Virus record (IMG/VR): IMGVR_UViG_3300012988_000001
Span: 124,001-188,000 of that record
Strand: one strand, 5' to 3'
DNA length: 64,000 bases
The position numbers and the translations under genes were made by a program. Under the pieces are notes generated by a model. It did no database searches, was not told the DNA's origin, and saw only the letters and a list, made by a program, of their open reading frames with translations. This document shows positions 36,205 to 63,863 of the stretch, piece after piece; position 1 is the stretch's first letter; each line of letters begins with the position of its first letter.

Positions 36205-36246
36205 TATTTATTTTTTTGGGACAAACGAACATTTATGTGATATAAT
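36205..36246. promoter_or_regulatory. Composite divergent promoter: late TAAATA (minus) + GGGACA-N17-TATAAT (plus)
   Basis: TATTTA 36205-36210, N7, GGGACA 36218-36223, TATAAT 36241-36246. Confidence 0.85.
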
Positions 36247-36286
36247 CATTTTATATCGTGCTAAATTAACAAAGGAGAATGCACTT

Positions 36287-38557
36287 ATGAGTTCCAGTTT
36301 CCAAGATTTGTTCAATGATAGTAAAGCACTAGCCCAACAGCTAGGCCATCAATTCATGACCGTAGACCACCTAAGTGCAACTGTGTTAAAGGTTCAAAGT
36401 GTTAAAGACGCACTAGAATCTTTCTCAATTGACACTAATATCCTAGGTCAACGTATCGAAGATTATCTTCGTGAAGTACCACCTCCTGAGCTACCTGTGT
36501 CCGTCCAAGAACAAATTGGAAGCGACCAAGTACCGGTATCAGTCCTTGTTACTCGTGTGATGAACGAGCTACAAAAACAAGCTGTAATTGAACAGCTAAA
36601 AAATGATGATTTCGTAGTAGAAGGTTTCTTTGTACTATTCGAATGTCTATCATTCTCAAACACTGCACTAGAAGCAGCATTGAAAGAACAATCTCTAACA
36701 CGTGCAGAAGTGGCCCGTTCACTACAAACATATGTTAGTAATGTTCGTTCAGATCTTGATTTAACAAAGACTGTAAAAAACGAACCGAAAGGAGGTCGTG
36801 TGTCTCAACAACAACCATCATCTGGTAAGAAATCTATTGAAGATTACACTACCAACCTAACCGACCTTGCACGTGAGGGTAAACTAGACCCAATGATTGG
36901 TCGTGAGAAAGAGCTACTAGCACTAATTGAGACTCTATCTCGTCGTACTAAGAAAAACCCATGCCTTGCAGGTGAAGCAGGTGTTGGTAAAACCCAAATC
37001 ATCGACGGTCTAGCACAAGCAATCGTTGATGGTAATGTCCCAGAACACATGAAAGAACTAACTATTCTTTCCCTAGATATGGGTTCATTCACTGCTGGTA
37101 CTAAGTATCGTGGTGAATTCGAAGAACGCGTTGACAACTTCCTAAAAGAACTAAAGAAACGTGAAAATACCATCATCTTCATCGATGAAATCCATACTAT
37201 CATGGGTGCTGGTTCTTCATCTTCTGGTACTATGGATATGAGCAACCTAATCAAACCTGCTCTATCTCGTGGTGAGATTAGCGTTATCGGTGCAACCACA
37301 TATGACGAATATCGTCAACACATCGAAAAAGATGGTGCACTATCTCGTCGTTTCATGAAAATTGACGTAGTTGAACCAACTTATGATGAAACTGCTCAAA
37401 TCGTAAAAGGTATCCAATCCAAATACGAAGAGTTCCACGGTGTTACCTACACTGAAGATGCAATTGCAGCAGTAATGGAACTATCCAAGAAGCACCTACA
37501 GTCTCGTCGTTATCCTGATAAGGCAATCGATCTACTTGATGCTTCAGCAGCCAAGAACCGCACTAAGGTTGGTACTGATTTAGTAGTTAAACGTTCTGAT
37601 ATCGAAGAAGTAGTTGCAAGTATTGCTAACCTAGACCTTTCTGTGGTAGCATGTACTGAAAGTACTCGTATGAATGAACTACCAGACCTACTACGCAAAC
37701 GTGTATTCGGTCAAGAAGAAGCAGTACAGAAACTTGTTGATAACGTAATGGTTGCACGTGCTGGCCTACGTTCTGACGCAAGCGTACAAGGTGCATTCAT
37801 GTTTGTCGGACCATCTGGTACTGGTAAAACTGAGATCTCCAAAGCATTAGCTGATTCAATGGGTTCTAAGCTAATTCGTTTCGACATGTCAGAGTTCTCA
37901 CAGGAACATACTGTAGCTAAACTAATCGGCTCACCACCGGGTTATGTTGGTCACGACACTGGTAACGGTCTACTACTAGATCAAATCGAATCGCATCCTA
38001 ATGCAGTTCTATTGCTAGATGAGATCGAGAAAGCACACCCTAAAGTACTACTAACCTTCCTTCAAGTACTAGATGAAGGTCGTCTAACTGGTTCTAAAGG
38101 TAAAACTGTGTTCTTCAATAACGTAACTGTTATTATGACTACTAACCTAGGGGCTAAAGACTCTGAGAAACGTAGCATGAGTATGGGTAGTTCTGAAACT
38201 GGTCAGGATAAGGCTATTAAAGCATTCCTACCACCAGAATTCCTAAACCGTATTGATTCAATCGTGAAGTTCAAAGAACTAAGCACTGAAGCAATCGACA
38301 GCGTTATTGACAAGTTCATGAAAGAAGTACAAGATTCCGTAGCTGGTCGTAAAGTTGCAATCGTCCTACAAGATGATGCTCGTGCTTGGTTGGCAGCGAA
38401 CGGTGTACAGAAAGGCATGGGTGCACGTCCAATGAAACGCACCATTGAACAAAACATCAAGCTACCACTAGCACGTGAAATCCTTTGTGGTTCACTACAA
38501 AATGGCGGCGTTGCTGAGTTCACAATCGAAGACGGCAAGATTGTTCTTCAAAAATAA
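36287..38557 (+). CDS. clpA: ClpA-like Hsp100 AAA+ unfoldase
   Basis: Clp N-domain; GEAGVGKT/IFIDE and GPSGTGKT/LLLDE; AGTKYRGEFEER; PPGYVG; GARP; no ClpB M-domain. Confidence 0.92.
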   Translation: MSSSFQDLFNDSKALAQQLGHQFMTVDHLSATVLKVQSVKDALESFSIDTNILGQRIEDYLREVPPPELPVSVQEQIGSDQVPVSVLVTRVMNELQKQAVIEQLKNDDFVVEGFFVLFECLSFSNTALEAALKEQSLTRAEVARSLQTYVSNVRSDLDLTKTVKNEPKGGRVSQQQPSSGKKSIEDYTTNLTDLAREGKLDPMIGREKELLALIETLSRRTKKNPCLAGEAGVGKTQIIDGLAQAIVDGNVPEHMKELTILSLDMGSFTAGTKYRGEFEERVDNFLKELKKRENTIIFIDEIHTIMGAGSSSSGTMDMSNLIKPALSRGEISVIGATTYDEYRQHIEKDGALSRRFMKIDVVEPTYDETAQIVKGIQSKYEEFHGVTYTEDAIAAVMELSKKHLQSRRYPDKAIDLLDASAAKNRTKVGTDLVVKRSDIEEVVASIANLDLSVVACTESTRMNELPDLLRKRVFGQEEAVQKLVDNVMVARAGLRSDASVQGAFMFVGPSGTGKTEISKALADSMGSKLIRFDMSEFSQEHTVAKLIGSPPGYVGHDTGNGLLLDQIESHPNAVLLLDEIEKAHPKVLLTFLQVLDEGRLTGSKGKTVFFNNVTVIMTTNLGAKDSEKRSMSMGSSETGQDKAIKAFLPPEFLNRIDSIVKFKELSTEAIDSVIDKFMKEVQDSVAGRKVAIVLQDDARAWLAANGVQKGMGARPMKRTIEQNIKLPLAREILCGSLQNGGVAEFTIEDGKIVLQK

Positions 38558-38562
38558 GAAAT

Positions 38563-38589
38563 AAAAAAGGAGCCAATTGGCTCCTTTTT
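38563..38589. terminator. Bidirectional terminator
   Basis: AAAAAAGGAGCC-AATT-GGCTCCTTTTT. Confidence 0.9.
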
Positions 38590-38591
38590 GT

Positions 38592-41500
38592 TTATCCTTT
38601 AATTAGCGTAGGTAGGATAGTACCCGGAATTTGTAGTGATGAACTATAAGTACTTAAAGGTATTACTGGATAATTATTTGCATAATCAACCATCTTATCT
38701 TCTTTCCCTAGGTTCAATCCTGTTCCCAAATATCCATCAGGATAGTAATTCTCAACTGTTCCATTAATAGCACGTAAAGCGTTACCGTTTTTACGTAGAA
38801 GCATCTGCTCTCCATTTAAGGAAATAACATCACCTTCTGTACTATTCGCACCACTTACCACATTACCATCAACTGACACTGATCCAACATTTGTTGGTTG
38901 TGAAACCACGGTAATGTTTTCAACGCTGTCATTGGTAATTACTGTAACTCTACTAGGAGAGGTAACATAAACATCGTCAACTAGTGGTAATGCATATGTC
39001 CAATAAGCGTCTGTAGTGTCTGTAGCTGGTACAAGTACTGGCTGGATTGTTGAAGTGTTGAATTCATAAACGAATATTTGTAGTGAATCGGTCATTTTAG
39101 TACGAACAAGTTCGCCTAGAACACCTTCACCATAAATCGGCTGGTAATAGCCGTGGTCAACACCATCAATAATTTCATTAGAAATATACCACACATCATA
39201 ATCATCATCGCTGAATCCATCAGTGTATTCTCCACCATCCAACATAACATCATAGAACACGTCATAATCCATCGCATCGACCGCGTAGGAGCGATTTGCG
39301 GCATATTTGACATAACTACCAGCATTGAATTCGGCATCGTTAAAACTCGTTACACGAAGCACAGTGATGCTTGTGTGATCTGAAACAGCCGACCATTCTG
39401 AACCATTAGTTGAATATGTTTGTGAGAATACTAATCCACCGATTGTAACGTTACGTCCACTTACCGCAGTAACTTTAAACATAGTAGGTCTGTTTCCAGT
39501 TCTAATATTGTTTTCAGTTAGGATAGTATGGAAAGTACCGTCAGCCGCAACAGCATCATAATCTTTACCTTCTGGGGTAAACACCATAACATTATCACCA
39601 ACTTTCAATCCATGATTGCTTCCTAGTCTAACAACACCATTTACGTTAATTACATCATACACATGGTTGACGTACTTAATTTCATCATGATACATGTTAG
39701 TTCTATCCATCAATGCAATTGCTTCTGCATAGCGAGGAATACTCACAACTGCTTCTGCTTTGTTATATGGGTTGAGGGTAATGAAACCTTCAACTTGGAA
39801 GTTACCTTGATCTTTAAGTTGTGGCATATTTGCCGCATCGTATGAATACCCATCAACCGTAAATCTAAGTTGAGACATATTTTGCTTGTTCGGGTTTAAC
39901 TCTGAAATGTCAATGAAGACTGAATCTTGAGTTGTGTTTACCGTATCAATAGCAGATAGCTCAATTCTCTTAGTTTGTGATTCTAGTGCTAAATTATCAA
40001 ATGAGTTCATGTCATCATAATAAACATTGGAGTTAAATGAAGTCATGATTTGTTGATAATCAGAGTACAATGGATTGTTTTTATCCATTGGTAGATCATC
40101 TAGATTTGGTTCACCAACAAATACGTTATCACCTTGAGTGATGAATTGGTCTTGCATGAAGTCTTCTAGACTTTGATTGAATGGTACAGTGAAATAATCC
40201 CCTGCATCATTACGAATCGATACCAACTTACGTGGAACCATTACCATACAGAATGCATCAAAATCGCGATTATCAAGAATTGCTTCTGCAAACGCATAGT
40301 GATCTGAATTATCCTTATAGTAACTATTACGCATAGCTGTTAGTACTAAAAGAGTGTCGTTGTAGTGATCAGTATTAATTGTCACTCCACCAATGCCATC
40401 ATCTTCTGTTGTTTCAATCATCCAGCAATATAAACCGTACTCATGTGCCAAATAGAAGTAAATGTCATTATCTGAATAGGTTGGGTTCTGAGCTTTCGCC
40501 ATAGAAACAAACTTATCAAATAATTCTCTGGTATGCATTACATAACCAAAGTTTTCACCGTTACTTGGTGCGAAACCAAATGGTAGTCTAGTATTTGGGT
40601 TATCATCAATAGATATACCTTTAAACGGACAATCAACTTGATCTTCAATTGCATCAATATCATAAGAAGTATAAAGTCTCAATCTATTAGAAAGAGTATT
40701 AAACATTCTATATTTTTGCATAATATCAATAGAGTCATCGCTTGATAGAACTTCATTGGTTGCACTAATTACATCTTTTGTGAATTGTTCAGTAGCTGGA
40801 ACATCCTGTTCTAATGTTTCGTACATAGCTTGTATACCTGCGGCAACACTAGTAGACATATTAAAATCTGGATATTTTTGAGTTAGAATCGAACCAATTG
40901 CATTATTGATTTGACTTTCATTTGCCACTGGGAACGTATATTCATAACGTTGTAATTTATAATGGCTTCCTTTTGTTAAGAAATCTTGCTCATTACTCTG
41001 GAATTGCTTATTAACATCATCTAGAATTGCTGCTGCTGGCATATCTTCATCAGGTACACACTGAACATTATCATAATGCATAATAACATCAATTTCTTGG
41101 AATCTTCTATTCGGTAATTCGAAATCACTCGGTAGAGAACCATGAATTTCCCATTTATTGGTTACGGTGTTAAATTGTGCATATTCATAATCCCAGATAT
41201 CAGATTGTGTTTTAACCCACTTACCATTAACGAAAATATATCCAGTTGGATCTAAATCATTTAGTAAGCCATTAATTTCATCACTATCAGAAGTTTTCTG
41301 TTCAATCTGAGAACGAATCTTAGTACGATATGGTTTTACTTCTTCGAAATAAGATACGATTTGTCCAATTAGGTCTTCACTATTAGAATAGTTCTGTTTT
41401 AGAGATTGGTCTAAACCAACAATAAAGATATATGAAGTTTTAAACACCCAATCAACCACTTGTTGTTCAGTATGAACATACTTAACCATATCAAACACAA

Positions 41501-44500
41501 CGTCACTCTGATGCATGTCGAATGAATTTTTAAGTAAAGCTAGGGCTTTACGAACGTTTATTTCAACGTTGGTTAATTCACCATCTTCATTGTATTGAGT
41601 GTAGTTATTGTATAGTTGGTTGTTCAACTGTAAAGTACTATTCTGACGACCGATTGCAGTCCATAGAGAAACGTTACGTGAATAATCTTTACGGTACAAT
41701 GTCCAAACACCATCTGCATCTACAATACGAATGATATCACCAACCTGATAGTTTTTAGTATCAGCAATGTCTAGTGAAATTTCTGATGTATATTCGGTAT
41801 ATTCATCATATCCAACATCATACCAATCAGCTAATGACCAATACTGAGTCATATCTAGAGAAGTTCCTAGAGTTGCAATATAATCAGATTGCTTAATCAT
41901 TGAATGCTGACCTTCACCTTTATTCTCTAGTGTGATTGTAATCGCAGTTCCTGATGAACTAGGGTTATTCATTAGATGAATATAACCATCGTCATCGTAG
42001 TGTACGAAATACACACTGGTTGAATTTAGTGGTGATGGTAAAGTACCATTGGTGCTTACAAGAACTGCATCGTTTTCCAAGAATTTTTGTTCATTGGTAG
42101 CAATAACAAGTTGGTTGTTATAAGTTAGTACTTTAAATCCAACTTCATTTGGGTTAGTTTGTAATGTTTTAACATTGAATACATCATTCATTACAACGGT
42201 ATTAGTAGTCATGTTAATATGGCGATAAATGTCATTAGCTGAGTCCACGAATGTTCTACGAGCTTCAATGATATCTTTAAACCATACTTTAGATGAACCT
42301 AATCCCAATTCAGTTTGTGGATAATGCAATTCCTGTACTTGACCATTCAATAATGTTTCTTGACCCATTAATGAGTTCCATAGGGAATTCCAAATTTCAG
42401 GGTTGAAATTATAACTGTCACCTTCCTTACAAAGTTGATACTGTTCGTGTTTTACAACGTCATCTTGATCTTCTTTATAAGATATTGTTAAAATACTCTT
42501 ATCATCAGTAACTTCATATTGCATATCTGACATGATGAATGAAGTTTCAGAGATTGGTGCATACCAAGGCGTATTCAAAGCGAGTGGATCACGAATAATA
42601 CGAGAAATTTCTTGACAAGACTTATCGCGGTTCTTCACTTGCGGTACATATATACCATTTTTAACCCAGAAATAGTACTTACGTACATAAGATTGGGTAT
42701 GAGTATCATATATAATGAATTCACTATAGTTTTCTTCCAATGCAGTTCCACTAGGAACATATTCATTTTCAGTTTTGTTTAGTTTAGCCTGTTCATCACA
42801 GTATCTATCCCAATCATATGGTTCAACTGGAGATTCTACCCATTCATAGATATTAATATCACCATGTGGTAAGATTTTACCCCAATTCACTCGTTTGTAC
42901 TCAAGAGTTGCTTCATTATCAACATTACCATTCGAATCATAGATTGGACGGGTATAGTCAACAAAGTATGCTTCTCTCGTATCCCACCATACTGTACCTA
43001 CTTTATCAGAAGCCCATGCCATTTCCTCTTCACCATTGCTATTATACAATGCTGGGTCATGTGCACCAGTATATGTGACGTTAGTCATCGCTGGACCCGG
43101 TAAAATACCGTTAATTGGGTCATAAAGGTTAATATACAACTCAGTTACGTTAGTTAATGAATTATATGTAGTCGCTTTCTCGAATAAAGTACTTTCAGGT
43201 GCTGCAAAGCTATATTTCTTATTAATATAAGAATCTTTATCAGCAGATGTTGCGAATCTTGATTCATAACGATACAATACAGGCTGTGGAGCACTGAATG
43301 TCATATCAATTGCAATGTTAACTGGAACAATTAGTTCATTAGCTGCTGAACCTGAATTATAATATTGCATTTCTGCTTTAAGTAGGTCAGGCATATAGTT
43401 AGTTTGGTCAACGAAGTAGAAATAATCACCATCAACCATTCCGTGTGCTGCACTTAACGTTAGTTTACAGAATTGTGTAGGCATATTATCTTCACTAGGA
43501 ATTGCCGTAATTGCAGTTAGCTTGATATTGGTATTAATTAACTCAAAGATGTTCCATGTATCAGACATATCCTGTAGCATCCAAACAGAGTTCGGTACTT
43601 CACCAGATTTAGCCATATACGATAGACGGTCAGTGTAAGCAGTTGTAAAATCTTTAGTACTGTAATCAATTTCATCTAGTGTTACTGGTCCAATATCAGG
43701 TAGATTGATGTTATCGCTTCTTCCTGAACGCATTGGGAATGCAAAATTACCTTTAGGACGAGTAATCCAACGACTATCCTCACCTTGTTCACCAAAGTAT
43801 ACAATATTATTTCCATTTCCATTACTAGTTGCATTTTTATCAAATGTAATTAGTTGTGGTTGCTGTTTAAATTCATTGTTTATCAATTGGAACTGTAGTG
43901 ATTTTTTGCCATAGATATTACCATACGTACCAACTTTAAACGCCCACTCTTGTAGTGCTTTATATTCATCAGTATTATATGATTTAGATACACGTAATAC
44001 ACGTTCTAGTACTTGATTTGAACCTTTATCTTTAATAAACCCTTTATAGAAGTTGACACGAGCAGGTTCACTGGTAATCATTCGAGTTAAGTAATCTCTC
44101 GACTGATATCCAATTAGGTGACGACCTAAATCACGTAGTGAAACATCCGATACCGGTTCTTCCACATCATAATAATGTTGGAAGTCAGTGACAAGAGTCT
44201 CAAAGTCTGGTAAAGTACCAGCTTCCAACACAATAAAGCCCGGAGCTTCTAAACGACCATTCCATGAACCAGTTACATAACCATACATACGAATTAATTC
44301 TTGTACTGAACCGTATACTGGAATATATATGGAATCACCAAATATGGTAACATCATCGAATACTACTGCATGTTCATATGCAACTAGGCTCACGCGAATT
44401 AACGCCATACGCTTATCAACATCATCAGCTAGACGTACTGTGAATACGTTACCCAAACGAGTTGTTTGAATTTCGTATGGACGAATACCAGTATTCTCAT

Positions 44501-48611: not shown

Positions 48612-48646
48612 TTATTTCTCCGTAAAATTCATTTCAGTATTTGTTT

Positions 48647-48654: not shown

Positions 48655-48655
48655 G

Positions 48656-48683: not shown

Positions 48684-48687
48684 AAAA

Positions 48688-52152: not shown

Positions 52153-52179
52153 TTTATACCTCGTATATTAGTATAGAAA

Positions 52180-52185
52180 TATTTA
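52180..52185 (-). promoter_or_regulatory. Late promoter TAAATA
   Basis: 27 nt upstream of ATG 52152. Confidence 0.7.
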
Positions 52186-52187
52186 TC

Positions 52188-52216
52188 AAAAAGAAAGGCT
52201 CCCCGAAGGAAGCCTA
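52188..52216 (-). terminator. Terminator with C(UUCG)G tetraloop
   Basis: Minus strand AGGCTTCC-TTCG-GGGAGCCT-TTCTTTT. Confidence 0.85.
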
Positions 52217-52219
52217 TTA

Positions 52220-52612: not shown

Positions 52613-52621
52613 TAATTATCC

Positions 52622-53110: not shown

Positions 53111-53141
53111 ATTTTATTCTCCTTTATTTAGTCGCCTAAAA

Positions 53142-53147
53142 TATTTA
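53142..53147 (-). promoter_or_regulatory. Late promoter TAAATA
   Basis: 31 nt upstream of ATG 53110. Confidence 0.6.
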
Positions 53148-55814: not shown

Positions 55815-58071
55815 GGCTTCCTTCTCCTTCGTCATCATCAGTTAATTGGTCACGTCTACGTAGAGAACGCATTACAATACCACCTGATAATTGTTGTGTA
55901 AATGATCCATTTGGACCAAAGTCACTTACTACTTTATTAACACGATAAATTGTTTGTGAGAATATCGTTGGAGTATCGTAATCCAAGATACCTGTTGTAT
56001 CACTAATCGCAACTACTGGTTTAATATTCAATAATAGATATGCTTCGCTATTAATCCAGTTTGCAACGTGGATATCGGTAATATCTACATCCATATCTTC
56101 ACCAGCTACTGCTTTTTGTAGATAGTTCATGTAAGAAATGTCACTCCACCCCAACCAGAATGGGTCACCTACTACTTTCATGTCTAATTTACTCAAGAAC
56201 GAACGGTTATAGTAGTTGTCACGCATTAAACGACGGTCCATTTCATAGCTACTGCTATTATCATTGACAGAACCGGATTTTGCTGTTTTAATGTTCTGTG
56301 GTTCTGTGGGAATTGCATCAACTGTGCCATTTTTTCCGCCAATCCCTTCAGTGCCAGCATAGGTCATATCATATTCGTTGCGATAATCTTCGATATATGA
56401 TGGATCTGATACCTGATATGTCAATGTGTCCTGTTGTTCGTCTTCTTGACCAACTTTCATCTGTGCTGCGGCTTGGGCGTCACGAATAAAACGTTGTTCT
56501 TCGTCGGTTAAAACGCGACCATTGGCTTGCTCGTCTTGTAAATCCTTCGATTTGCTCCACATGTCTTGCACGTTGGTACGAATTGAGGTATCATATGTCG
56601 TATCTCCAAGCTGAATGTACTCAGCAGCGTGTGTACCTTCGCGGTTTTCAATATCACGTTGTGTATCTGGGTTACGAGTAACCGCAACGTTGAATCCTTG
56701 GTCAAATTTAAGCTCTAAATTAAGAATTTCTTGGTTTAGACCAGTAAATTGATAATCATATCTCTTAATATTAAGTTTAGGTTCTTCATTCCCTTCTACT
56801 TCGTATTTTTCAGCATTTTCGAAGAAATATTCAAAGTTGAACTTTTCATGTTTTAAGTCCTCTTCACTAACAACATCACCAATATTGTACTTAATAATGT
56901 AATAATGGTTTTTGTATGCTAAGGTTGCACGAATTGGGTCATATCCAACATATTTTTGAATAGGGATGATGTTTACAAACTGGCGACGACGATCAGTACT
57001 GGATTGTATTGGAATACAGCAGTCTAAAACGTCATCAAATGCACGTGAAATAGGAACATCTGCACCCCAAGAGAAGTCTTTTGCACCATCAGAACCATTT
57101 ACAGTGTTGCCGACTTCTTTTGATTGTTTCATGTCATAGTTAATAGACATACCACGAAGTTCATCTGGAACATGAATCTCATAATACATACCATTAGCAA
57201 ATTCAGAGTACTTATGCTGCAAATAACCATATTGTTTATCAGCCATTTTATTCAATTTATCTTGAATCTGATCAACAAAATCACCAAAGGTAGTAGAAGT
57301 ACAAGTATATGGTTCTTTAAGCATCCAATCCTTGTTATCAACTAAACCTGCACGAGCACGAGTCATTTGTAAGTCATATGTAATAGTACCGCCACTTTCA
57401 GTTGCACGAGCTTTGATAGTATTGATACGAACCGCCCATTGGCGTTTTAATCCCGGAATACGATTTGGTTTACCAGTTACTGGATGGAAACCGATAAAAT
57501 CCATTTCCATAATTAATGGTAAGTCCATGAACTTGTTATATCCTAGATCATTTGCAAGTACTACAAGATCATTGAATAATGACATACCATTATTTTCAGA
57601 AATAGCCATCACGCAGTTATTAAACGAGAAGTTTGATGTTAAACCCGGTGATGCTGGAGCAGCAGAAGTAATTTGAACACTATCAATACTAAAGCGACCA
57701 GTTACACCACTCTCTGCAATTATATGTCGAGCAACTTCTGTATCTGGATTATCCCAAAATAGATGATATTGTGCAGAACTCAATGCAAATAGGGTAAAGT
57801 GGTAAGTGTAGTTGTCATATTTCAACAACACATTATCATATGGAACTACGAAATCATTTAAGTTAACATCTGAATATACCCCTTCAGCACTGTTCCAGTT
57901 TTTAGGGCGTTCTGCTGTAATTTTAGCTTTATATGGATTGGATGAATTCGGATTCATCCCTGAAATTTTACCATTTGCATCAGCAGTAGTTTCTGCTGGT
58001 TGATTAGTTACCGTTACGGGAATAGAAGTTGTTTGTGTACTCCCAACATCCGTATAATTTAAGTCTGCCAT
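55807..58071 (-). CDS. Baseplate hub protein (gp27-like by position)
   Basis: Lies between gp53-like and gp5-like genes; C-terminal VVGDPFW...YRVNKVVSDF..GSFTQQL hub motif. Confidence 0.65.
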   Translation of the reverse strand: MADLNYTDVGSTQTTSIPVTVTNQPAETTADANGKISGMNPNSSNPYKAKITAERPKNWNSAEGVYSDVNLNDFVVPYDNVLLKYDNYTYHFTLFALSSAQYHLFWDNPDTEVARHIIAESGVTGRFSIDSVQITSAAPASPGLTSNFSFNNCVMAISENNGMSLFNDLVVLANDLGYNKFMDLPLIMEMDFIGFHPVTGKPNRIPGLKRQWAVRINTIKARATESGGTITYDLQMTRARAGLVDNKDWMLKEPYTCTSTTFGDFVDQIQDKLNKMADKQYGYLQHKYSEFANGMYYEIHVPDELRGMSINYDMKQSKEVGNTVNGSDGAKDFSWGADVPISRAFDDVLDCCIPIQSSTDRRRQFVNIIPIQKYVGYDPIRATLAYKNHYYIIKYNIGDVVSEEDLKHEKFNFEYFFENAEKYEVEGNEEPKLNIKRYDYQFTGLNQEILNLELKFDQGFNVAVTRNPDTQRDIENREGTHAAEYIQLGDTTYDTSIRTNVQDMWSKSKDLQDEQANGRVLTDEEQRFIRDAQAAAQMKVGQEDEQQDTLTYQVSDPSYIEDYRNEYDMTYAGTEGIGGKNGTVDAIPTEPQNIKTAKSGSVNDNSSSYEMDRRLMRDNYYNRSFLSKLDMKVVGDPFWLGWSDISYMNYLQKAVAGEDMDVDITDIHVANWINSEAYLLLNIKPVVAISDTTGILDYDTPTIFSQTIYRVNKVVSDFGPNGSFTQQLSGGIVMRSLRRRDQLTDDDEGEGSRG

Positions 58072-58082
58072 AAGTTACTCCA

Positions 58083-58397
58083 TTATTTTATGCGACGTGG
58101 ACTATTTAGATAAGTTTGGACACGCTGCAAAGATGGGATACGAATTACAGTACCCGCTGTGAAATCATAAATTGGATCTACTAAAATATTAGGATTTAGT
58201 AGAGCAAAAATGTAATATAAACGTTCATTACCATACAATTCGTATGATAAACGCCACGGTTGCTCGTTATATTCAGTTGGAATCGTATAATTAACATCTG
58301 AATCGGCTGGAGCAATACCAATTGGCTGGTTGTACGCTAAGTACCATGTTTGACGTACTTTCGCATATGGAGAGTACTGACTGTATGTAGAAGCCAT
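58083..58397 (-). CDS. gp53: Baseplate wedge protein, LysM-like (gp53-like)
   Basis: PWRLSYELYGNERLYYIFALLNP...GTVIRIP. Confidence 0.8.
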   Translation of the reverse strand: MASTYSQYSPYAKVRQTWYLAYNQPIGIAPADSDVNYTIPTEYNEQPWRLSYELYGNERLYYIFALLNPNILVDPIYDFTAGTVIRIPSLQRVQTYLNSPRRIK

Positions 58398-59128
58398 TAA
58401 ATGAATCCTCCTTTTCTCATTAGTGCACCGCGTTTAAACGCATTTAAGTTGAACTCCTTGGTCATATAATCCGAGGTAGGCTGTTCTTCTAATTGAATTG
58501 TGATAGGTAGTTTTTGTGGAATCCACACTTCGTTTTCTGGATTCATAAAACCTGCTGCACGTAAATTATTAAAGAACTCACGTGTATCTTTATCTGTAAT
58601 ATTAAACTTTGTTGTGATAGAATCCACTGGAACTTGAATTAGTGGAGTGTCATTGTTGAAGTTAAAATTATATGATTTAATTATAACAGGAACATCATTG
58701 TACATATATCTCCCATAACCACTGAAAAGCAAAATTGGAGGTGGTGCACCAACAACAGCTTTATTTGGGTTATTGGCAACTGCTGCCTGACGACCGAAAT
58801 CCATTAGTGAACACGAACGAATGAAGTTCATACATGCTAAAGTGTATATTGCTTCGGTTGCAGTACTAGAATGAAAATCACCCTGTATTGAAATAACTGC
58901 GTTTGTTGTATTTTTATAGTTGTTGTAGTTACTATTACTATGCATTGTTTGTTGCGTTTCGTAGTTTACAGTACGTTGTTCAGAGATAGTTGGTGTGTAG
59001 TTCCATACCATACCATTAGTAGAACGTAGTATTGATAGTAATGTTGGGTTACGCATATTACCATCATCACCGTACACATAGTTTTGTGCAGCGGGGCGAG
59101 GGCGTAATCTAATTCTGCGATCTATCAT
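58397..59128 (-). CDS. Baseplate tube-initiator-like protein
   Basis: YTPTIS, GAPPPILLFSGYG, VPVIIKS, WIP motifs; start moved to ATG 59128 (AAGGAG SD). Confidence 0.65.
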   Translation of the reverse strand: MIDRRIRLRPRPAAQNYVYGDDGNMRNPTLLSILRSTNGMVWNYTPTISEQRTVNYETQQTMHSNSNYNNYKNTTNAVISIQGDFHSSTATEAIYTLACMNFIRSCSLMDFGRQAAVANNPNKAVVGAPPPILLFSGYGRYMYNDVPVIIKSYNFNFNNDTPLIQVPVDSITTKFNITDKDTREFFNNLRAAGFMNPENEVWIPQKLPITIQLEEQPTSDYMTKEFNLNAFKRGALMRKGGFI

Positions 59129-59156
59129 AAAATTCTCCTTAAAAAGACTTATATTA

Positions 59157-59197
59157 TATTTATAATCTTGGGACAAAATGAAAAAATGTGATATAAT
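59157..59197. promoter_or_regulatory. Composite divergent promoter: late TATAAATA (minus) + GGGACA-N16-TATAAT (plus)
   Basis: TATTTA 59157-59162, N7, GGGACA 59170-59175, TATAAT 59192-59197. Confidence 0.85.
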
Positions 59198-59247
59198 AGT
59201 GAGGTGGGACACGGATCGTCCTATGAATTTACATGGAGTGTTACAAT

Positions 59248-60093
59248 ATGATAACCAAACCGAAGCGTAAGAAATATTTGAATAACGCTGATTTACTAAG
59301 AGAAATTCATCTCAGTAAAATGTCATACTGCTGGCTCATTGATGAGTCGTATAGCATGTATGATTACATAGTCTTTGATGTTAGTGAGATTGATGAAGAA
59401 TTGCTTGAGAAAGCAAGTGCTGCACGTATCAAACGTCTTAACAATGAAACAATTGAAAATATTCGTTCAACACAGGGTCTTTCTGCTAAAAAAGCTAAAG
59501 AATACGCTGATGCACACGGATTAGTACTAACCACTGTACCTATTGATGAAGTTGTTATTCGCGTAATTACCGATGAACATATTCCCGATGAGGGTACTGG
59601 TAAGATTCGTGTTAACTTCGAACCATTCAAACATTACATCGTAGATGATAATGCCGTTTTTTATGAAGTTGCTCGTTCACACTGGCTAGGTGATACCGAT
59701 ACCGGGGAGTTTTGTTTAACTCACGGAAGAATGACCAATGAATTAGGAAAAATGTTCATTAAACTTGCAGAAGAAATTTCCCATAAAACTAATTACCGAA
59801 ATTATACGTACTTAGATGAAATGATGGGTGATGCAAGAATACAATTAGTCAAAAACGCATTGCTTTTTAAAGAAAGCATTTTGTATAAAAAAGACAAACC
59901 TGCTGTTCAATTAAATCCTTTCTCTTACTATACATCTTTCGTCAATAATGCATTCCGTTCTGTTTTGAATACAGAAAAGAATGTACGCAATATTCGTGAT
60001 GACTTACTTGAATTAAATGGCTTTACGCCAAGTCACACACGACAAATTGAAATTGAAATGAAAATGATGGAAGGTAAGAATGGCTCTATTTGA
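59248..60093 (+). CDS. gp55: Late-transcription sigma factor (T4 gp55-like) with a large insertion
   Basis: YLNNADLL, LGKMFIKLAE...NYRNYTYLDEM.GDA, NPFSYYTSFVNNAF; ATG 59248 has a GGAG SD. Confidence 0.9.
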   Translation: MITKPKRKKYLNNADLLREIHLSKMSYCWLIDESYSMYDYIVFDVSEIDEELLEKASAARIKRLNNETIENIRSTQGLSAKKAKEYADAHGLVLTTVPIDEVVIRVITDEHIPDEGTGKIRVNFEPFKHYIVDDNAVFYEVARSHWLGDTDTGEFCLTHGRMTNELGKMFIKLAEEISHKTNYRNYTYLDEMMGDARIQLVKNALLFKESILYKKDKPAVQLNPFSYYTSFVNNAFRSVLNTEKNVRNIRDDLLELNGFTPSHTRQIEIEMKMMEGKNGSI

Positions 60094-61111
60094 TAAAGCA
60101 GTAACGTTCACTGATATTCATCTAGGATTGAAGAATAACAGTAAAGAACATAACACAGATTGCGTTAACTTCGTAAAATTCATGATTAATGAAGCCAAAG
60201 AACGTGATATAAAAATTTGTATCTTTATGGGAGATTTTTTCCATAACAGAAGTAACGTTAATATCAGTACTCTAAACTACGGTCTAGAAGTAATGAACCT
60301 ACTTAACGATAACTTTGAAAAAACATACTTCCTTGTCGGAAACCATGATATGTACCATAAGAACAAACGTGACATTACTAGTATTAACATGGCACAGGCG
60401 TTCACCAACATCGAATTCATTAATAAGATGCAAACAATCGATGACTGTACTTTCATTCCTTTTATGATTGATGATGAGTACAAACAATTGCCATCACTAA
60501 CCAGCAAATATGTTTTCGGTCACCTTGAATTACCCGGTTACCTTCTAAACAAAATGGTTGAGATGCCAAATCATGGTAAAGAAACACAAGAGTCTTTCAA
60601 CGGCTGTGAATATGTCTTTAGTGGTCACTTCCACAAACGACAATCTAAAATCACACCAAGCGGTACTCGCGTAATTTATACTGGCAACTGCTTCCCTCAC
60701 AACTTCTCAGATACTTGGGATGATGCACGTGGTATTATGTTCCTAGAACATGGAAAAGAACCACAATTTAAAGCATGGGAAGATGCACCTAAATATAGGA
60801 CTTTCACTCTTTCGGAATTACTTAATGAGCCTTCTTATTACGTTCAAGACAACGTAGTTGCTAAAGTTCAGATTGATATTCCAGTAAACATGAATGAAAT
60901 CTCTTATATTCGAGAGGTATTCACTAAGCTATACAATGTTCGTGAATTCAACATTGTAAACAGCAGGAAAGCACTACAAGAGAGTTTAGAATACGGTGAA
61001 GTGGAAACAAGTACTGAATCAGTAGATGAAATCGTACTTAAACAAATCCAAGAAATCGATTCTCCTATGTTTGATAAGAATCTTCTAACACAAATTTATA
61101 CATCACTTTAA
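60080..61111 (+). CDS. gp47: Recombination nuclease subunit (gp47/SbcD/Mre11)
   Basis: DIH, GDFF, GNHD, GH, SGHFH metallophosphoesterase motifs. Confidence 0.95.
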   Translation: MALFDKAVTFTDIHLGLKNNSKEHNTDCVNFVKFMINEAKERDIKICIFMGDFFHNRSNVNISTLNYGLEVMNLLNDNFEKTYFLVGNHDMYHKNKRDITSINMAQAFTNIEFINKMQTIDDCTFIPFMIDDEYKQLPSLTSKYVFGHLELPGYLLNKMVEMPNHGKETQESFNGCEYVFSGHFHKRQSKITPSGTRVIYTGNCFPHNFSDTWDDARGIMFLEHGKEPQFKAWEDAPKYRTFTLSELLNEPSYYVQDNVVAKVQIDIPVNMNEISYIREVFTKLYNVREFNIVNSRKALQESLEYGEVETSTESVDEIVLKQIQEIDSPMFDKNLLTQIYTSL

Positions 61112-61122
61112 TGGAGTAAAGA

Positions 61123-63279
61123 ATGTTAACCATAAAACGAATTACAATGAGAAACTTCTTCTCATTCGGTAATGCACCACAAGAACTTGAATTTCAAGGT
61201 AGAGATATCTCTCTAGTACTAGGCCAGAACAACGATGTGGTTGTTGAAGGTGGTGATAGTGCTGGTCGTCGGAATGGCGTGGGAAAATCTGCTATAATTC
61301 AGGGACTAGTATTCGGGTTATATGGTAAAAGTGTTGGTAATGATATTAAAATCCCTAACCTAGTTAATAAAACTAACACGAAACAGTGTGAAGTAATTGT
61401 CGAATTCGAAAAAGACGGTCAAGAATACCGTATAGAGCGTGGGCGTAGTCCCACGTATTTTAATTTCCTAACTATCAAGGATGGAAATGTAATAGATGAT
61501 GATTCTAGAGGTGAAAAGAAGGATACCCAAGAAGAACTCAATGAGATTCTAGGTATTTCCCAGACACTTTTCGAACACATTGTTGTACTAAACGCCAACG
61601 TAGACCCATTTCTATCACTATCTGCACAAAAGCAGCGTGATATGATTGAAGAACTACTTGGTATTACCCAACTTACTGAAAAAGCAGAGCTACTTAAGGA
61701 TATGCAAAAGGATTCTAAGAAGACTGCTGAACAAGAGAAGTTTAAAATCGATACATTGATTGCGTCCAATGAACGTATTCAGAAAAGTATTGAGAATCTT
61801 CAAACACAAGCCAATACTTTCGAGTCAAATAAACTCAATAAGATTGAATCTCTTAAAACACAGTTGACAGAGTTTGATTTTGCTGATAAATTTGGTTTTG
61901 AATCATTATATGATAGTGCTAAAGAGATGGAAGAAGCAATTGAGCATAATAATAAGCGTTCAGTACTTGAGAATCGTTTGAATTCTTTGATGCAGAAGCG
62001 TGAACAATATGACCAACAGCTTCAAACCAACAAAGTGTTAGTGCTAAACAAGATTAATGAGCTAAAAGCTATTGATATTAGTGCGGAATTAGCATTACAT
62101 GAAGAATTAGATGTGTGGTATCAATTAGAAGGTATTCTAAAACAAAATACCAGTACTAAAGTGTTCAAAACACAGACTATCAAACAAACTGAGTCTGAAT
62201 TAGTACGCTTGAATGATTCCCTCACTAAAGAATACAACAAATTGAAAACAATTGAAGATAGCAAATGTCCAATGTGTGATGGTGAATTGAAAAATGACCA
62301 TAATCATTCAGAAATGATTGTTAAAATAAAAGATACAATTGAGGATTTATCTTCTCAGATATTACAAGCGGAATATAACATTTCTGTTATCACTGAAGAG
62401 ATTGATGACCTTGAAATTTTTGAAATGCCACCCAAACCAGTGACTAAGTACAGTACTCTAGCAGAAGCTAAACTTCATGAGCACATGTTAGCTGAGAATA
62501 CAGCGAAATATGAAGCAGAAGAAGTGAATATCTATGACGAGGAACTAATCAGTACTTATACTGAGTTGGAAGGAACTGAATTGAAGGAATATGACGTAGT
62601 ATTCAGTACTCATGAAGTACAGCAGCTTGAAATGAAGTATAAGTCCCTAAAGGAACAATTACAGCGTGAAGAAAGTAATGCTAACCCATATTTCGACCAA
62701 ATTGAGACATTGAAGACTGATTCATTGCAGGTTGTAGACTATAGTCTATATAATGAGATGGAAAAGCTAGCTACACACCAAGATTTCTTGGTTAAGCTAT
62801 TACTCAATAAAGATTCTTATGTTCGTAAGCGTATTATCGAGCAAAACATCACATTCTTGAATAGTAGATTACAATTCTACATCGAGCAATGTGACTCTGA
62901 ACACTTTGTGAAGTTCATGAACGACCTAAGTGTTGAGATTACCCTAAATGATCAGTCCTATGACTACAAGCAATTGTCTCGTGGGGAGCGTACACGTGTA
63001 AACGTGGCCTTGTCATTGGCATTTAGAGACACTTATGAGTCATTATACCAAGGAATCAACCTTATCATGATTGATGAGATGATTGATGTGGGTCTAGATC
63101 CGTCTGGTATCACTCGTATGTGGACAATCTTTGCTGATTTAGCAGTAATTCAGCGTAAAAACGTCTTTGTTATCTCTCATAAAGAGGAATTACTAAGTAA
63201 GACGGACAATATCTTGAAGATTGTCAAAGAAGATGGTTTTAGTACTATCGAATATTCATCACTTGATGACATGTTTTAA
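61123..63279 (+). CDS. gp46: Recombination ATPase subunit (gp46/SbcC/Rad50)
   Basis: NGVGKS Walker A, coiled coil, CPMC zinc hook, LSRGE signature, IMIDE, ISH. Confidence 0.95.
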   Translation: MLTIKRITMRNFFSFGNAPQELEFQGRDISLVLGQNNDVVVEGGDSAGRRNGVGKSAIIQGLVFGLYGKSVGNDIKIPNLVNKTNTKQCEVIVEFEKDGQEYRIERGRSPTYFNFLTIKDGNVIDDDSRGEKKDTQEELNEILGISQTLFEHIVVLNANVDPFLSLSAQKQRDMIEELLGITQLTEKAELLKDMQKDSKKTAEQEKFKIDTLIASNERIQKSIENLQTQANTFESNKLNKIESLKTQLTEFDFADKFGFESLYDSAKEMEEAIEHNNKRSVLENRLNSLMQKREQYDQQLQTNKVLVLNKINELKAIDISAELALHEELDVWYQLEGILKQNTSTKVFKTQTIKQTESELVRLNDSLTKEYNKLKTIEDSKCPMCDGELKNDHNHSEMIVKIKDTIEDLSSQILQAEYNISVITEEIDDLEIFEMPPKPVTKYSTLAEAKLHEHMLAENTAKYEAEEVNIYDEELISTYTELEGTELKEYDVVFSTHEVQQLEMKYKSLKEQLQREESNANPYFDQIETLKTDSLQVVDYSLYNEMEKLATHQDFLVKLLLNKDSYVRKRIIEQNITFLNSRLQFYIEQCDSEHFVKFMNDLSVEITLNDQSYDYKQLSRGERTRVNVALSLAFRDTYESLYQGINLIMIDEMIDVGLDPSGITRMWTIFADLAVIQRKNVFVISHKEELLSKTDNILKIVKEDGFSTIEYSSLDDMF

Positions 63280-63285
63280 AAACTA

Positions 63286-63310
63286 AAGGGAGCATTAGCT
63301 CCCTTTTTTT
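63286..63310. terminator. Bidirectional terminator
   Basis: AAAGGGAGC-ATTA-GCTCCCTTTTTTT; the EndoVII stop lies within it. Confidence 0.85.
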
Positions 63311-63789
63311 ATATTAAGCATATCCAGCTTACCTTCTTTTATTAATTTACGAGCTTGATTGGCTCTTTTCTTAACATTACTCTCTGGAACAACGCCAAAT
63401 GACTCTAAAATGTCGCATTGTTGTTTAGCAGGTAGTGCTTTATACTTTTTAACATCAACTGATAGTGCTGTATGATGAATTACCATCTCTTCTTCAGGGA
63501 TAGATCCGTTTCTCTCTAAGTAATCTGCTAAATTTCTTAGTACTTCATAAAGTGGCTTATCAGTTAAGTGTTTCATGTACCTATTAAAGCTGTTAGTTAC
63601 TTTCCCTTCCCATGCGTTGCATTCATTTTGTAATACTTCACGACAATGCTGGTGGCCTTGGTGATAGTGATCAAGTACTGGTTTGGTAATTACTTCTTTT
63701 GTGATTGGATCTATGCCATTCTGCTTTTTCAGCAAATCGTTACGGTACTTTGCCGCATCCTTTGCATCCTTTAATCGTTTTTTACTCAT
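63295..63789 (-). CDS. gp49: Endonuclease VII-like Holliday junction resolvase
   Basis: QNG....PVLDHYH...REVL..ECNAWEGK...LRNLADYLE; C-terminal ..LESFG.....N...R. Confidence 0.85.
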   Translation of the reverse strand: MSKKRLKDAKDAAKYRNDLLKKQNGIDPITKEVITKPVLDHYHQGHQHCREVLQNECNAWEGKVTNSFNRYMKHLTDKPLYEVLRNLADYLERNGSIPEEEMVIHHTALSVDVKKYKALPAKQQCDILESFGVVPESNVKKRANQARKLIKEGKLDMLNIKKGS

Positions 63790-63821
63790 AATAGTACTTC
63801 CTTAAAATAATTATTATGTAG

Positions 63822-63863
63822 TATTTACATTTTTGGGACAAAACCAGTTTTATGTCCTATAAT
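63822..63863. promoter_or_regulatory. Composite divergent promoter: late TAAATA (minus) + GGGACA-N17-TATAAT (plus)
   Basis: TATTTA 63822-63827, N7, GGGACA 63835-63840, TATAAT 63858-63863. Confidence 0.85.

What the first reader, a model, noticed from the sequence alone, without database searches (positions are those of the whole stretch)
36205..63863. Back-to-back early/late promoter cassette with invariant spacing TATTTA-N7-GGGACA
Seen: the window has three places where a late unit diverges from a GGGACA-promoter unit: gp14/clpA (36205-36246), baseplate/gp55 (59157-59197) and EndoVII/non-coding segment (63822-63863). In all three, the minus-strand late box TAAATA lies exactly 7 nt from the plus-strand GGGACA box, although the spacers differ. 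The three non-divergent GGGACA promoters have no TATTTA at that position. Inference: the two polymerase footprints must overlap. The module may be a hard-wired switch (mutual exclusion), or a GGGACA-bound factor may act on both promoters. At 59157 it would give gp55 negative feedback on its own promoter.
Basis: partly seen in the sequence, partly recalled or inferred. Interest (0 to 1): 0.75.

Follow-up and report, generated by a model that had tools for sequence, protein, structure and literature searches.

The report
Back-to-back late and middle phage promoters
Three compact divergent control regions of a 366-kb Rak2-like jumbo phage place a T4-type late promoter box 7 bp from the -35 box of an oppositely oriented middle-class promoter; the tight packing is old and conserved, but the exact 7-bp spacing is a lineage quirk, not a rule.

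Summary
TATTTA-N7-GGGACA occurs three times in the window (36205, 59157, 63822), nowhere else in the 366-kb genome, and never in shuffles.

Both boxes look like real promoters:
- TAAATA is a T4-type late box. It is depleted 3-fold, follows the strand of the local genes, and usually lies 25-35 nt upstream of a start codon.
- GGGACA-N16/17-TATAAT (TGn in most) is one of 29 promoters, all on the + strand.

The GGGACA class is middle-type, not early. It drives nrdD, ssb, an exonuclease, clpA and gp55, and corresponds to the published CBB/GAP32 'TGAAACG' class. Canonical TTGACA promoters form a separate class. The phage encodes its own sigma70-family factor and has no detectable MotA or AsiA.

The spacing is not invariant:
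- Other divergent late/GGGACA junctions in this genome have 9, 20, 23 and about 100 nt.
- Orthologous junctions in 12 relatives have 5, 6, 7, 8, 12, 18 and about 55 nt.
- In the nearest clade, a homing-endonuclease gene has split the third cassette by about 0.95 kb.

What is conserved is tight apposition. The late box lies 27-30 bp from the -10 at the gp55 and clpA junctions in nearly every relative. This implies start sites about 54 bp apart and overlapping polymerase complexes. A regulatory switch is possible but unshown; genome compaction plus inheritance explains the data.

The parts
36205..36210 (-). Late promoter box (aa)TAAATA of junction 1. It serves the leftward virion-structural operon and lies 30 nt upstream of the start codon at 36174.
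   Evidence: The box is conserved in all 12 relatives at the orthologous junction.
36218..36246 (+). Middle-class promoter of the clpA-like gene: GGGACA (36218-36223), a 17-nt spacer with TGn, and TATAAT (36241-36246).
   Evidence: It is orthologous to CBB promoter Porf_235.
34675..36174 (-). Virion structural protein gene (about 500 aa), the first gene of the leftward late unit.
   Evidence: ORF call. Its N-terminal 167 aa match phrog_11591 'virion structural protein' at E 1e-90. The fENko orthologue was found in virions by LC-MS/MS, per the record annotation.
36287..38557 (+). ClpA-like AAA+ ATPase gene
   Evidence: phrog_4871 'ATP-dependent protease', E 2.3e-292.
59157..59162 (-). Late promoter box of junction 2, a perfect TATAAATA. 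It lies 28 nt upstream of the start codon at 59128.
   Evidence: Conserved in all relatives examined.
59170..59197 (+). Middle-class promoter of the gp55 late-sigma gene: GGGACA (59170-59175), a 16-nt spacer with TGn, and TATAAT (59192-59197).
   Evidence: It is orthologous to CBB promoter Porf_244.
58397..59128 (-). Virion structural protein gene, the first gene of the leftward baseplate operon.
   Evidence: phrog_12050, E 1.9e-130. Synteny with annotated relatives.
59205..59223 (+). Conserved hairpin in the gp55 leader. The stem is TGGGAC/GTCCTA and the loop is A(C/A)GGAT(C/T).
   Evidence: RNAalifold on 11 genomes predicts 6 pairs, 4 of them with compensatory changes (alignment A1).
59248..60093 (+). 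gp55-like late sigma factor gene (281 aa)
   Evidence: phrog_12791 'sigma factor for late transcription', E 5.5e-148, and phrog_234, E 5.2e-18.
63295..63789 (-). Endonuclease VII gene (164 aa)
   Evidence: phrog_423, E 1.5e-32.
63822..63827 (-). Late promoter box (tg)TAAATA of junction 3, 32 nt upstream of the EndoVII start codon.
63835..63863 (+). Middle-class promoter: GGGACA (63835-63840), a 17-nt spacer without TGn, and TATAAT (63858-63863). It drives a non-coding RNA.
63871..64000 (+). 5' part of a large structured non-coding RNA. It runs on beyond the window to about G000 188,550.
   Evidence: The region has no ORF conserved among relatives and no Rfam match. Its sequence is conserved across the four named genera and Hallingskeid. 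45 of 106 predicted pairs show compensatory changes.

Best explanation
These are three compact divergent intergenic regions, about 110-120 bp where both sides are coding.

Each holds two promoters:
- A T4-type late promoter with core (a)TAAATA and no upstream element. It is presumably read by host core RNA polymerase with the phage's gp55-like sigma, and it points left into virion, baseplate or EndoVII genes.
- A rightward promoter of the phage's middle class, cTTGGGACAaa-N-(TGn)TATAAT. There are 29 copies in the genome, all on the + strand. It points into clpA, gp55 and a structured non-coding RNA.

The -35 box of the middle class differs from the canonical TTGACA of the phage's own early promoters, and it changes from genus to genus. 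It is therefore most likely read by the phage-encoded sigma70-family factor. That gene sits behind TTGAC-type promoters. This would give a three-step cascade: host sigma70, then phage sigma, then gp55. This step is inferred.

A late promoter needs nothing upstream of its box. Deletion pressure can therefore push it right up against the neighbour's -35 box, where the non-divergent members of the class carry an UP-like A/T element. The resulting gap is 5-9 nt. It is inherited with few indels, and it happens to be 7 nt at all three junctions in this lineage.

Geometry implies start sites about 54 bp apart. The two complexes would share roughly 25 bp or more of DNA, so they probably cannot sit there at the same time. 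That is a likely physical consequence of the layout. It has not been shown to be a selected switch. Shown here: the boxes, their classes, their conservation and the spread of spacings. Inferred: the start sites, the reading factors and the steric exclusion.
For: **The late box is real**
- TAAATA occurs 30 times in the window against 91.8 +/- 10.2 expected, and its strand follows the local gene strand.
- Genome-wide there are 137 copies, 70 of them 10-60 nt upstream of a start codon, with a mode near 30 nt.
- There is no information upstream of the box apart from a weak A at -1.
- A gp55 homologue is present.

**The GGGACA class**
- There are 29 sites, all on the + strand, with a consensus that includes an UP-like aaat..ttt..aaaaacTT element.
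- They lie in front of nrdD, ssb, an exonuclease, clpA, gp55 and ATPase genes.
- The class is distinct from about 45 canonical TTGACA promoters and from 16 immediate-early cassettes.
- It corresponds to the published CBB 'Promoter 1' class, which lists Porf_235 (clpA) and Porf_244 (gp55).

**Candidate reader of the -35 box**
- The phage sigma has regions 2 and 3 plus a divergent region-4-like C-terminus.
- No MotA or AsiA was found.

**Spread of spacings**
- In this genome: 7, 7, 7, 9, 20, 23 and about 100 nt.
- Late box to -10 distance in 13 genomes, junction 1: 30, 30, 30, 28, eight at 27, and 42 in RaK2.
- Junction 2: three at 29, five at 27, five at 28.
- Junction 3: 30-34, or 78-81, or split by an inserted gene.

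**Support for the compaction reading**
- The neighbouring segments (the two 5' leaders) are conserved in length about as well as the gap itself.
- Compaction is general. Late/late divergent pairs at G000 189594/189648 and 223893/223956 have crossing promoters in 54-62 bp.
Against: - At the gp55 junction the late box to -10 distance stays within 27-29 bp in all 13 genomes, while the sequence around it changes. This could reflect selection on the arrangement itself.
- Within a lineage, junctions 1 and 2 tend to share the same gap (7/7, 5/5, 5/6). This hints at a lineage-specific optimum.
- The gap never falls below 5 nt, which compaction alone does not explain.
- The three N7 promoters lack the UP-like A-tract that most class members have, so the late box has displaced something normally kept.
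- No transcript starts, timing or factor dependence have been measured for this phage or any close relative.
Confidence: 0.6

Rival explanations
1. Selected promoter-occlusion switch. The tight back-to-back layout is kept by selection because binding of the late holoenzyme blocks the middle promoter, and the reverse. This would give clean temporal hand-over and, at junction 2, negative feedback of gp55 on its own gene. The gap needs only to be short (5-9 nt), not exact.
For: - Tight apposition is conserved in all 13 genomes at junction 2 (27-29 bp) and in 12 of 13 at junction 1.
- A fourth junction (own genome 210087) is kept at 30-32 bp in several genera.
- The inferred start sites are about 54 bp apart.
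- In the T4 late complex, gp33 and the clamp occupy the upstream duplex, where the middle -35 and spacer would lie here (PMC7892883).
Against: - RaK2 junction 1 has an 18-nt gap with a canonical TTGACA box.
- Junction 3 ranges from 30 to about 80 bp, and is split by a 0.95-kb gene in a viable clade.
- The N20, N23 and roughly 100-nt junctions in the same genome work without the tight layout.
- Same-class late/late pairs overlap even more, and no temporal switch can be argued for those.
- The gp55 leader carries its own conserved hairpin, an alternative regulatory device.
- No gp45 homologue was detected.
Confidence: 0.2
2. The TATTTA at N7 is not a late promoter. It is simply the A/T-rich UP-like element of the GGGACA promoter, and the leftward genes are transcribed from elsewhere.
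For: - Non-divergent promoters at G000 305406 and 311751 carry TATTTA at N8 inside an UP-like tract.
- Offsets N7-N10 are the ones most compatible with the class's upstream composition.
Against: - 21 of 29 class members have no TATTTA within 30 nt.
- At the three sites the box lies 28-32 nt from a minus-strand start codon, the modal late-promoter distance.
- The hexamer is invariant at the orthologous junctions in all relatives while its flanks vary.
- TAAATA is otherwise strongly avoided in the genome.
- No other late box exists upstream of these leftward operons.
Confidence: 0.05
3. A single GGGACA-binding factor acts on both promoters, activating one and repressing or activating the other, so the 7-nt register matters.
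For: GGGACA is strictly conserved in all 29 promoters of the class, and the box varies by lineage. This suggests a dedicated phage reader.
Against: - 67 of 70 late boxes have no GGGACA nearby.
- The register differs among genera and among junctions.
- Cassette 3 is split in fENko-Kae01 and Munch.
Confidence: 0.03

Closest known systems
Promoter classes described for Pectobacterium phage CBB and Cronobacter phage GAP32 (Buttimer et al. 2017, PMC5259590; Abbasifar et al. 2014 as cited there)
   Same: The same three tiers are present:
- RpoD-like TTGACA promoters with an UP-like element.
- A second class with a normal -10 and an odd -35 (TGAAACG/TGGAACG), placed in front of DNA-metabolism genes and gp55.
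- A late ATAAATA motif in front of structural genes.

CBB Porf_235 (clpA) and Porf_244 (gp55) are the orthologues of cassettes 1 and 2.
   Different: The -35 box here is GGGACA. The -35 to -10 register differs by one base. The gap to the late box is 7 nt rather than 5-6 nt. The passages of the paper text and supplement that I searched do not describe the back-to-back pairing with late boxes.
T4 late promoters (TATAAATA, gp55/gp33/gp45; PMC2988020, PMC7892883)
   Same: There is a -10-like A/T box, no conserved upstream sequence and a gp55 homologue. The local synteny gp55-gp47-gp46-EndoVII is also present.
   Different: - The core is the 6-7-mer (a)TAAATA.
- gp55 has 281 aa, longer than T4 gp55 as I recall it (about 185 aa; not checked here).
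- No gp45-clamp Pfam match was found, and CBB's authors also found no gp33 or gp45.
- Activation may therefore work differently.
T4 middle promoters (MotA box plus sigma appropriation by AsiA)
   Same: This is a temporal class between early and late. It has a normal sigma70-type -10, often with TGn, and a phage-specific upstream box. It also drives gp55 and DNA-metabolism genes.
   Different: The box sits at the -35 position (16-17 nt spacer), not at -30. No MotA or AsiA homologue was found. A phage sigma70-family protein is present instead.
Back-to-back divergent promoters with overlapping upstream regions (for example lambda PR/PRM; recalled from general knowledge, not tested here)
   Same: Two oppositely oriented promoters sit so close that their complexes share DNA, so occupancy of one can influence the other.
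   Different: Here the two promoters belong to different temporal classes read by different sigma factors. No operator or repressor sites are evident, and no interference has been measured.
Phage-encoded sigma cascades (for example Bacillus phage SPO1; phiEco32 and 7-11, PMC8948821 listed)
   Same: A phage sigma70-family factor encoded in an early region, together with a promoter class whose -35 differs from the host consensus.
   Different: The link between this sigma and GGGACA promoters is only inferred. The inference rests on lineage-specific variation of the box and of the region-4-like helix.

Membership tests
T4-type late promoter (gp55-dependent) | A/T-rich -10-like box TATAAATA placed a short distance upstream of late (virion) genes | tested here: met
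   The core is (a)TAAATA. There are 70 boxes 10-60 nt upstream of start codons, the hexamer is depleted 3-fold, and its strand follows the genes. Site 2 is a perfect TATAAATA.
T4-type late promoter (gp55-dependent) | No conserved -35 or upstream element | tested here: met
   Information content is about zero from -20 to -2 of the box in 64 promoters.
T4-type late promoter (gp55-dependent) | Genome encodes a gp55 homologue | tested here: met
   window 59248-60093 matches phrog_12791 at E 5.5e-148 and phrog_234 at E 5.2e-18. It has no Pfam match.
T4-type late promoter (gp55-dependent) | Activation by the gp45 sliding clamp with gp33 | tested here: not met
   PF02916 and PF09116 give no match in the genome at E<=1. 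CBB's authors likewise report no gp33 or gp45. Remote homologues cannot be excluded.
T4-type late promoter (gp55-dependent) | Transcripts start about 6 nt downstream of the box, late in infection | not testable with these tools
   Only assembled contigs of doubtful RNA runs were available. They span the junctions like DNA would.
Sigma70-type promoter | -10 TATAAT with a 16-18 nt spacer to a -35 box; optional TGn and UP element | tested here: met
   28 of 29 sites have TATAAT. The spacer is 17 nt in 25 sites, 16 nt in 3 and 17 nt with TATACT in 1. TGn is present in most, and an UP-like consensus lies upstream.
Sigma70-type promoter | -35 box close to TTGACA (host sigma70 region 4 specificity) | tested here: not met
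   GGGACA is invariant. A separate set of about 45 TTGACA-type promoters exists in the same genome.
T4 middle promoter (MotA/AsiA sigma appropriation) | MotA box centred at -30, and MotA and AsiA genes | tested here: not met
   The box sits in the -35 register. PF09114 and PF09010 give no match.
CBB/GAP32 'Promoter 1' (divergent RpoD-like) class | Orthologous position and same architecture: odd -35, 16-17 nt spacer, TGnTATAAT; in front of clpA, gp55 and DNA-metabolism genes | tested here: met
   CBB Table S6 lists Porf_235 and Porf_244. The junctions align across relatives. The downstream genes were annotated.
Overlapping back-to-back divergent promoters (mutual occlusion) | Start sites closer than one RNA polymerase footprint | tested here: inconclusive
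   About 54 bp follows from the box positions, assuming a start 7 nt after TATAAT and 6 nt after TAAATA. The start sites have not been mapped.
Overlapping back-to-back divergent promoters (mutual occlusion) | Activity of one promoter measurably depends on occupancy of the other | not testable with these tools
   This needs in vitro transcription or reporter assays.
   In this genome the spacings are 7, 7, 7, 9, 20, 23 and about 100 nt. In relatives they are 5, 6, 7, 8, 12, 18 and about 55 nt, and one cassette is split by an inserted gene.

The most novel reading that the evidence does not exclude
The tight late/middle promoter pairing at the gp55 junction is a conserved autoregulatory device. 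The late box lies 27-29 bp from the -10 in all 13 genomes examined. Once gp55 holoenzyme accumulates, it occupies the leftward baseplate promoter and physically shuts the rightward promoter of its own gene. This would cap late-sigma levels and mark the middle-to-late hand-over. The same principle would apply at the clpA and exonuclease junctions.
Probability: 0.2. Interest if true: 0.55.

Novelty: new member of a known kind. Interest (0 to 1): 0.3.

Why it matters
**If the pairing is functional.** It would be a very economical way for a jumbo phage to switch between temporal programmes, and to limit its late sigma, without a dedicated repressor.

**If it is only compaction.** The analysis still gives a usable transcription map for the Rak2-like phages:
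- Four promoter classes.
- A probable host sigma70, then phage sigma, then gp55 cascade.
- The rule that late boxes can abut a neighbour's -35 box.

That map helps annotation and the engineering of these therapeutic-candidate phages.

**By-products that may be of more interest than the spacing.** A large structured non-coding RNA behind cassette 3, and a covarying hairpin in the gp55 leader.

Tried and rejected
1. **Public sequencing runs for transcript ends**. Only assembled contigs were available. Contigs in the 'RNA?' runs cross junctions 2 and 3, as DNA would. No starts or directions could be read, so these runs give no evidence either way.
2. **Rfam search of the region behind cassette 3**. 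The only match was a sub-threshold Trp-leader hit on the terminator. I rejected it.
3. **MotA, AsiA and gp45 Pfam searches of the genome**. No matches, so the T4 middle system and the T4 clamp activator could not be invoked.
4. **Sigma70 region 4 Pfam search**. No match. The phage sigma's C-terminus only resembles region 4 in an alignment.
5. **Recent duplication of one cassette.** I rejected the idea that the three cassettes are recent copies of one. Only the motif positions agree, and each cassette has its own orthologue across genera.
6. **Motif extensions as the whole explanation of the gap.** The late box extends by about 1 weak position and the -35 by 2-3 positions. That accounts for 3-4 of the 7 nt at most, so this is only a partial explanation for the lower bound of 5.
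7. **Escherichia phage CMSTMSU**. The record is an unverified, frameshift-ridden assembly, so I did not use it.
8. **Papers on fENko-Kae01 and fEgEco12**. Neither contains a promoter analysis.
Full report
**What the window is.** The window is bases 124,001-188,000 of a 366,160-bp phage genome with direct terminal repeats. Its DNA is 84% identical to Klebsiella phage fENko-Kae01 and Salmonella phages Munch and 7t3. It is about 73% identical to Escherichia phage 121Q, Cronobacter phage GAP32 and Pectobacterium phage CBB. It is therefore a Rak2-like jumbo myovirus. Gene order around the finding is the same in all relatives fetched. From left to right it runs:
- tail-sheath stabiliser and a virion protein (leftward)
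- clpA-like gene (rightward)
- a 10-kb virion gene and the baseplate genes (leftward)
- gp55, gp47 and gp46 (rightward)
- EndoVII (leftward)
- a non-coding stretch

**The observation.** TATTTA-N7-GGGACA occurs exactly three times, at 36205, 59157 and 63822, and in none of 100 shuffles. Each GGGACA is followed after 17, 16 and 17 nt by TATAAT. Each minus-strand TAAATA lies 30, 28 and 32 nt from a minus-strand start codon. The three other GGGACA promoters of the window lack the box.

**Are both boxes promoters?**

TAAATA behaves as a real late box:
- It is avoided in the window, with 30 copies against 91.8 +/- 10.2 expected. Every copy region follows the strand of the local genes.
- Genome-wide, 70 of 137 copies lie 10-60 nt upstream of a start codon, with a peak near 30 nt.
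- The sequence upstream of the box carries no information except a weak A at -1. This is expected for a T4-type late promoter and matches the ATAAATA motif reported for CBB and GAP32.
- A gp55 homologue is encoded at 59248-60093.

GGGACA-N16/17-TATAAT is also a real promoter class:
- It occurs 29 times in the genome, always on the + strand.
- Its consensus is cTTGGGACAaa...TGTGaTATAATa.
- Most members carry an UP-like aaat..ttt..aaaaa tract upstream.

**The GGGACA class is middle-type, not early.** The genome has several promoter classes:
- About 45 canonical TTGACA-N17-TATAAT promoters lie in blocks of small genes.
- Sixteen near-identical GTACTTGCA cassettes lie in the first 18 kb.
- GGGACA promoters instead precede nrdD, a cytidylyltransferase/NUDIX gene, a single-strand DNA-binding protein, an exonuclease, ATPases, clpA and gp55.

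CBB's authors described the same second class, with a normal -10 and the -35 box TGAAACG/TGGAACG. Their table lists the clpA promoter (Porf_235) and the gp55 promoter (Porf_244). These are the orthologues of cassettes 1 and 2.

The -35 box differs by genus:
- this lineage: GGGACA
- Erwinia phage Hallingskeid: GGGATG
- Asteriusvirus: TAGACA, GGAACA or GGGACA
- Mimasvirus and Serratia phage BF: TGGAACG

Host sigma70 does not vary like that, so a phage reader is likely. A candidate exists. It is a 322-aa sigma70-family protein at G000 325777-326745, and TTGACC- and TTGACG-type promoters lie about 1.5-2 kb upstream of it in the same + strand run. It has regions 2 and 3 (E 1e-18 to E. coli RpoD) and a divergent region-4-like C-terminus. 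The putative recognition helix of that C-terminus differs among lineages. MotA and AsiA are absent. I infer a cascade of host sigma70, then phage sigma, then gp55. This is not shown.

**Is the spacing invariant?** It is not.

In this genome the other divergent late/GGGACA junctions have gaps of:
- 9 nt (G000 210087)
- 20 nt (239587)
- 23 nt (362376)
- about 100 nt (69921)

The N20 and N23 cases keep the full UP-like tract between the boxes. Two non-divergent promoters have TATTTA at N8 inside their UP-like tract.

In 12 relatives (13 genomes with this one) I measured the distance from the late box to the -10 hexamer, which avoids guessing the -35 register:

| Junction | Late box to -10 distance (bp) |
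|---|---|
| 1 (clpA) | 30, 30, 30 (this lineage, fENko, Munch); 28 (Hallingskeid); 27 in eight genomes; 42 in RaK2, which has a canonical TTGACA there |
| 2 (gp55) | 29 in three genomes, 27 in five, 28 in five |
| 3 (EndoVII) | 30 here; 30 in Hallingskeid; 30-34 in Mimasvirus and BF; 33 in RaK2; 78-81 in Asteriusvirus |

In fENko-Kae01 and Munch a 318-aa HNH homing-endonuclease gene starts 2 nt after the late box of junction 3. The GGGACA promoter then lies about 0.95 kb further on, still in front of the non-coding RNA. That is a natural spacing experiment in a viable phage.

Whole-record pattern scans of five relatives show that four junctions per genome cluster at 27-32 bp, and the other junctions lie at 34-53 bp.

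The gap is no better conserved than the two flanking leaders. At junction 2 the gap is 5-7 nt, while the leaders measure 28-35 and 47-57 nt. If late boxes simply sit within a 5-9 nt window, three equal values have a probability of about 0.04-0.14.

**What is conserved, and why.** Tight apposition is conserved, especially at the gp55 junction.

The simplest reason is compaction. A late promoter needs no upstream DNA, so deletions can bring it up to the neighbour's -35 box. The generic upstream preferences of the class (conserved TT and an A-tract at -1 to -8) make offsets below about 6 nt unfavourable for a TATTTA. This partly explains why no gap is shorter than 5 nt.

Compaction is visible elsewhere in the genome. 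Late/late divergent pairs at G000 189594/189648 and 223893/223956 fit two crossing promoters into 54-62 bp. No temporal switch can be argued for those pairs.

**Geometry.** I assume a start 7 nt after TATAAT and 6 nt after TAAATA. Under that assumption:
- The two start sites at junction 1 are about 54 bp apart.
- GGGACA lies at -19 to -24 of the late promoter.
- The late box lies at -48 to -43 of the middle promoter.

In the T4 late complex the upstream duplex is held by gp33 on the flap tip and is encircled by the clamp at the upstream end (PMC7892883). A sigma70-type complex covers its own -35 box and, through alpha subunits, the UP region (general knowledge).

Whether this matters for regulation is unknown. 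No gp45 homologue was found here, so the late complex may differ from T4's.

**The gp55 feedback idea.** It is possible and is my 'novel case'. However, the gp55 leader also carries a conserved hairpin (59205-59223) in which 4 of 6 pairs show compensatory changes across genera. That is an independent candidate for gp55 control.

**Transcript data.** Public runs that hold this DNA were mostly DNA or total nucleic acid. Contigs from the best 'RNA?' run and from a metatranscriptome run straight across the junctions. They say nothing about start sites.

**Novelty and verdict.** The promoter classes are published for CBB and GAP32. I did not find the back-to-back pairing described in the papers I read.

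The pairing is a new example of a known kind of arrangement: divergent promoters sharing upstream DNA. The claim of a fixed 7-nt module fails. A looser claim survives as an untested hypothesis: that tight pairing is conserved and has steric consequences.

Interest is modest (0.3). The structured RNA behind cassette 3 shows compensatory changes at 45 of 106 predicted pairs and has no Rfam family. It may deserve more attention than the spacing.

Noticed in passing
window 63871-64000, continuing to about G000 188,550 (L007:871-1552): A conserved non-coding region of about 650-700 nt is transcribed from the cassette-3 GGGACA promoter and ends at a strong bidirectional terminator.
- It is present in this lineage, Hallingskeid, Asteriusvirus, Mimasvirus and Serratia phage BF, and absent from RaK2.
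- RNAalifold predicts 106 pairs, 45 of them with compensatory changes.
- It has no Rfam match at E<=1.

It looks like an undescribed large structured RNA of Rak2-like phages.
   Followed up: partly
window 59205-59223: Hairpin in the gp55 5' leader. The stem covaries across genera (GGGAC/GTCC, AGAAC/GTTCT, AAAAC/GTTTT, GGTAC/GTACC) and the loop A(C/A)GGAT(C/T) is conserved. It is a candidate post-transcriptional control site for the late sigma.
   Followed up: partly
L001:31912-32925 (fENko-Kae01) and L029:30996-32009 (Munch): A 318-aa HNH homing-endonuclease gene (phrog_559, E 1.4e-70) is inserted 2 nt after the EndoVII late box. It separates that box from the GGGACA promoter of the non-coding RNA by about 0.95 kb.
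   Followed up: yes
G000 325777-326745 (L008:1267-2235), outside the window: Phage-encoded sigma70-family protein (322 aa). It has regions 2 and 3 (E about 1e-18 to RpoD), no Pfam region 4, and a region-4-like C-terminal helix-turn-helix with an insertion. The residues of the putative recognition helix differ among lineages whose middle-promoter -35 boxes differ.
   Followed up: partly
G000 303-17612, outside the window: Sixteen near-identical promoter cassettes of the form aaaGTACTTGCAttact...TATAATgttttgcatagggga, all on the + strand, lie in the first 18 kb. They are probably immediate-early promoters of the terminal-repeat region.
   Followed up: no
G000 189594-189648 and 223893-223956; window 30504-30609: These are divergent late/late junctions. 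At the first two, the oppositely oriented TAAATA boxes cross, so the two leaders overlap as antisense within 54-62 bp. In the window the two boxes are back to back, 27 nt apart.
   Followed up: partly
whole genome: All 29 GGGACA promoters and nearly all TTGACA-type promoters are on the + strand. Minus-strand blocks are almost purely late (virion) genes.
   Followed up: no
G000 210007-210077 (junction 4): Two minus-strand late boxes lie upstream of one leftward gene pair. The distal box (N9 from GGGACA, 112 nt from the called start codon) is the conserved one: TATTTATCA(A/T)(A/T)T in fENko, 121Q and Hallingskeid. The proximal box is 47 nt from the start. The reason for the long leader, or a possible missed small gene, was not resolved.
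   Followed up: no
window 58400-60500: Near-identical DNA of this phage turns up in plant, soil, freshwater, wastewater, gut and beetle metagenomes, and in several runs labelled with single organisms.
   Followed up: no
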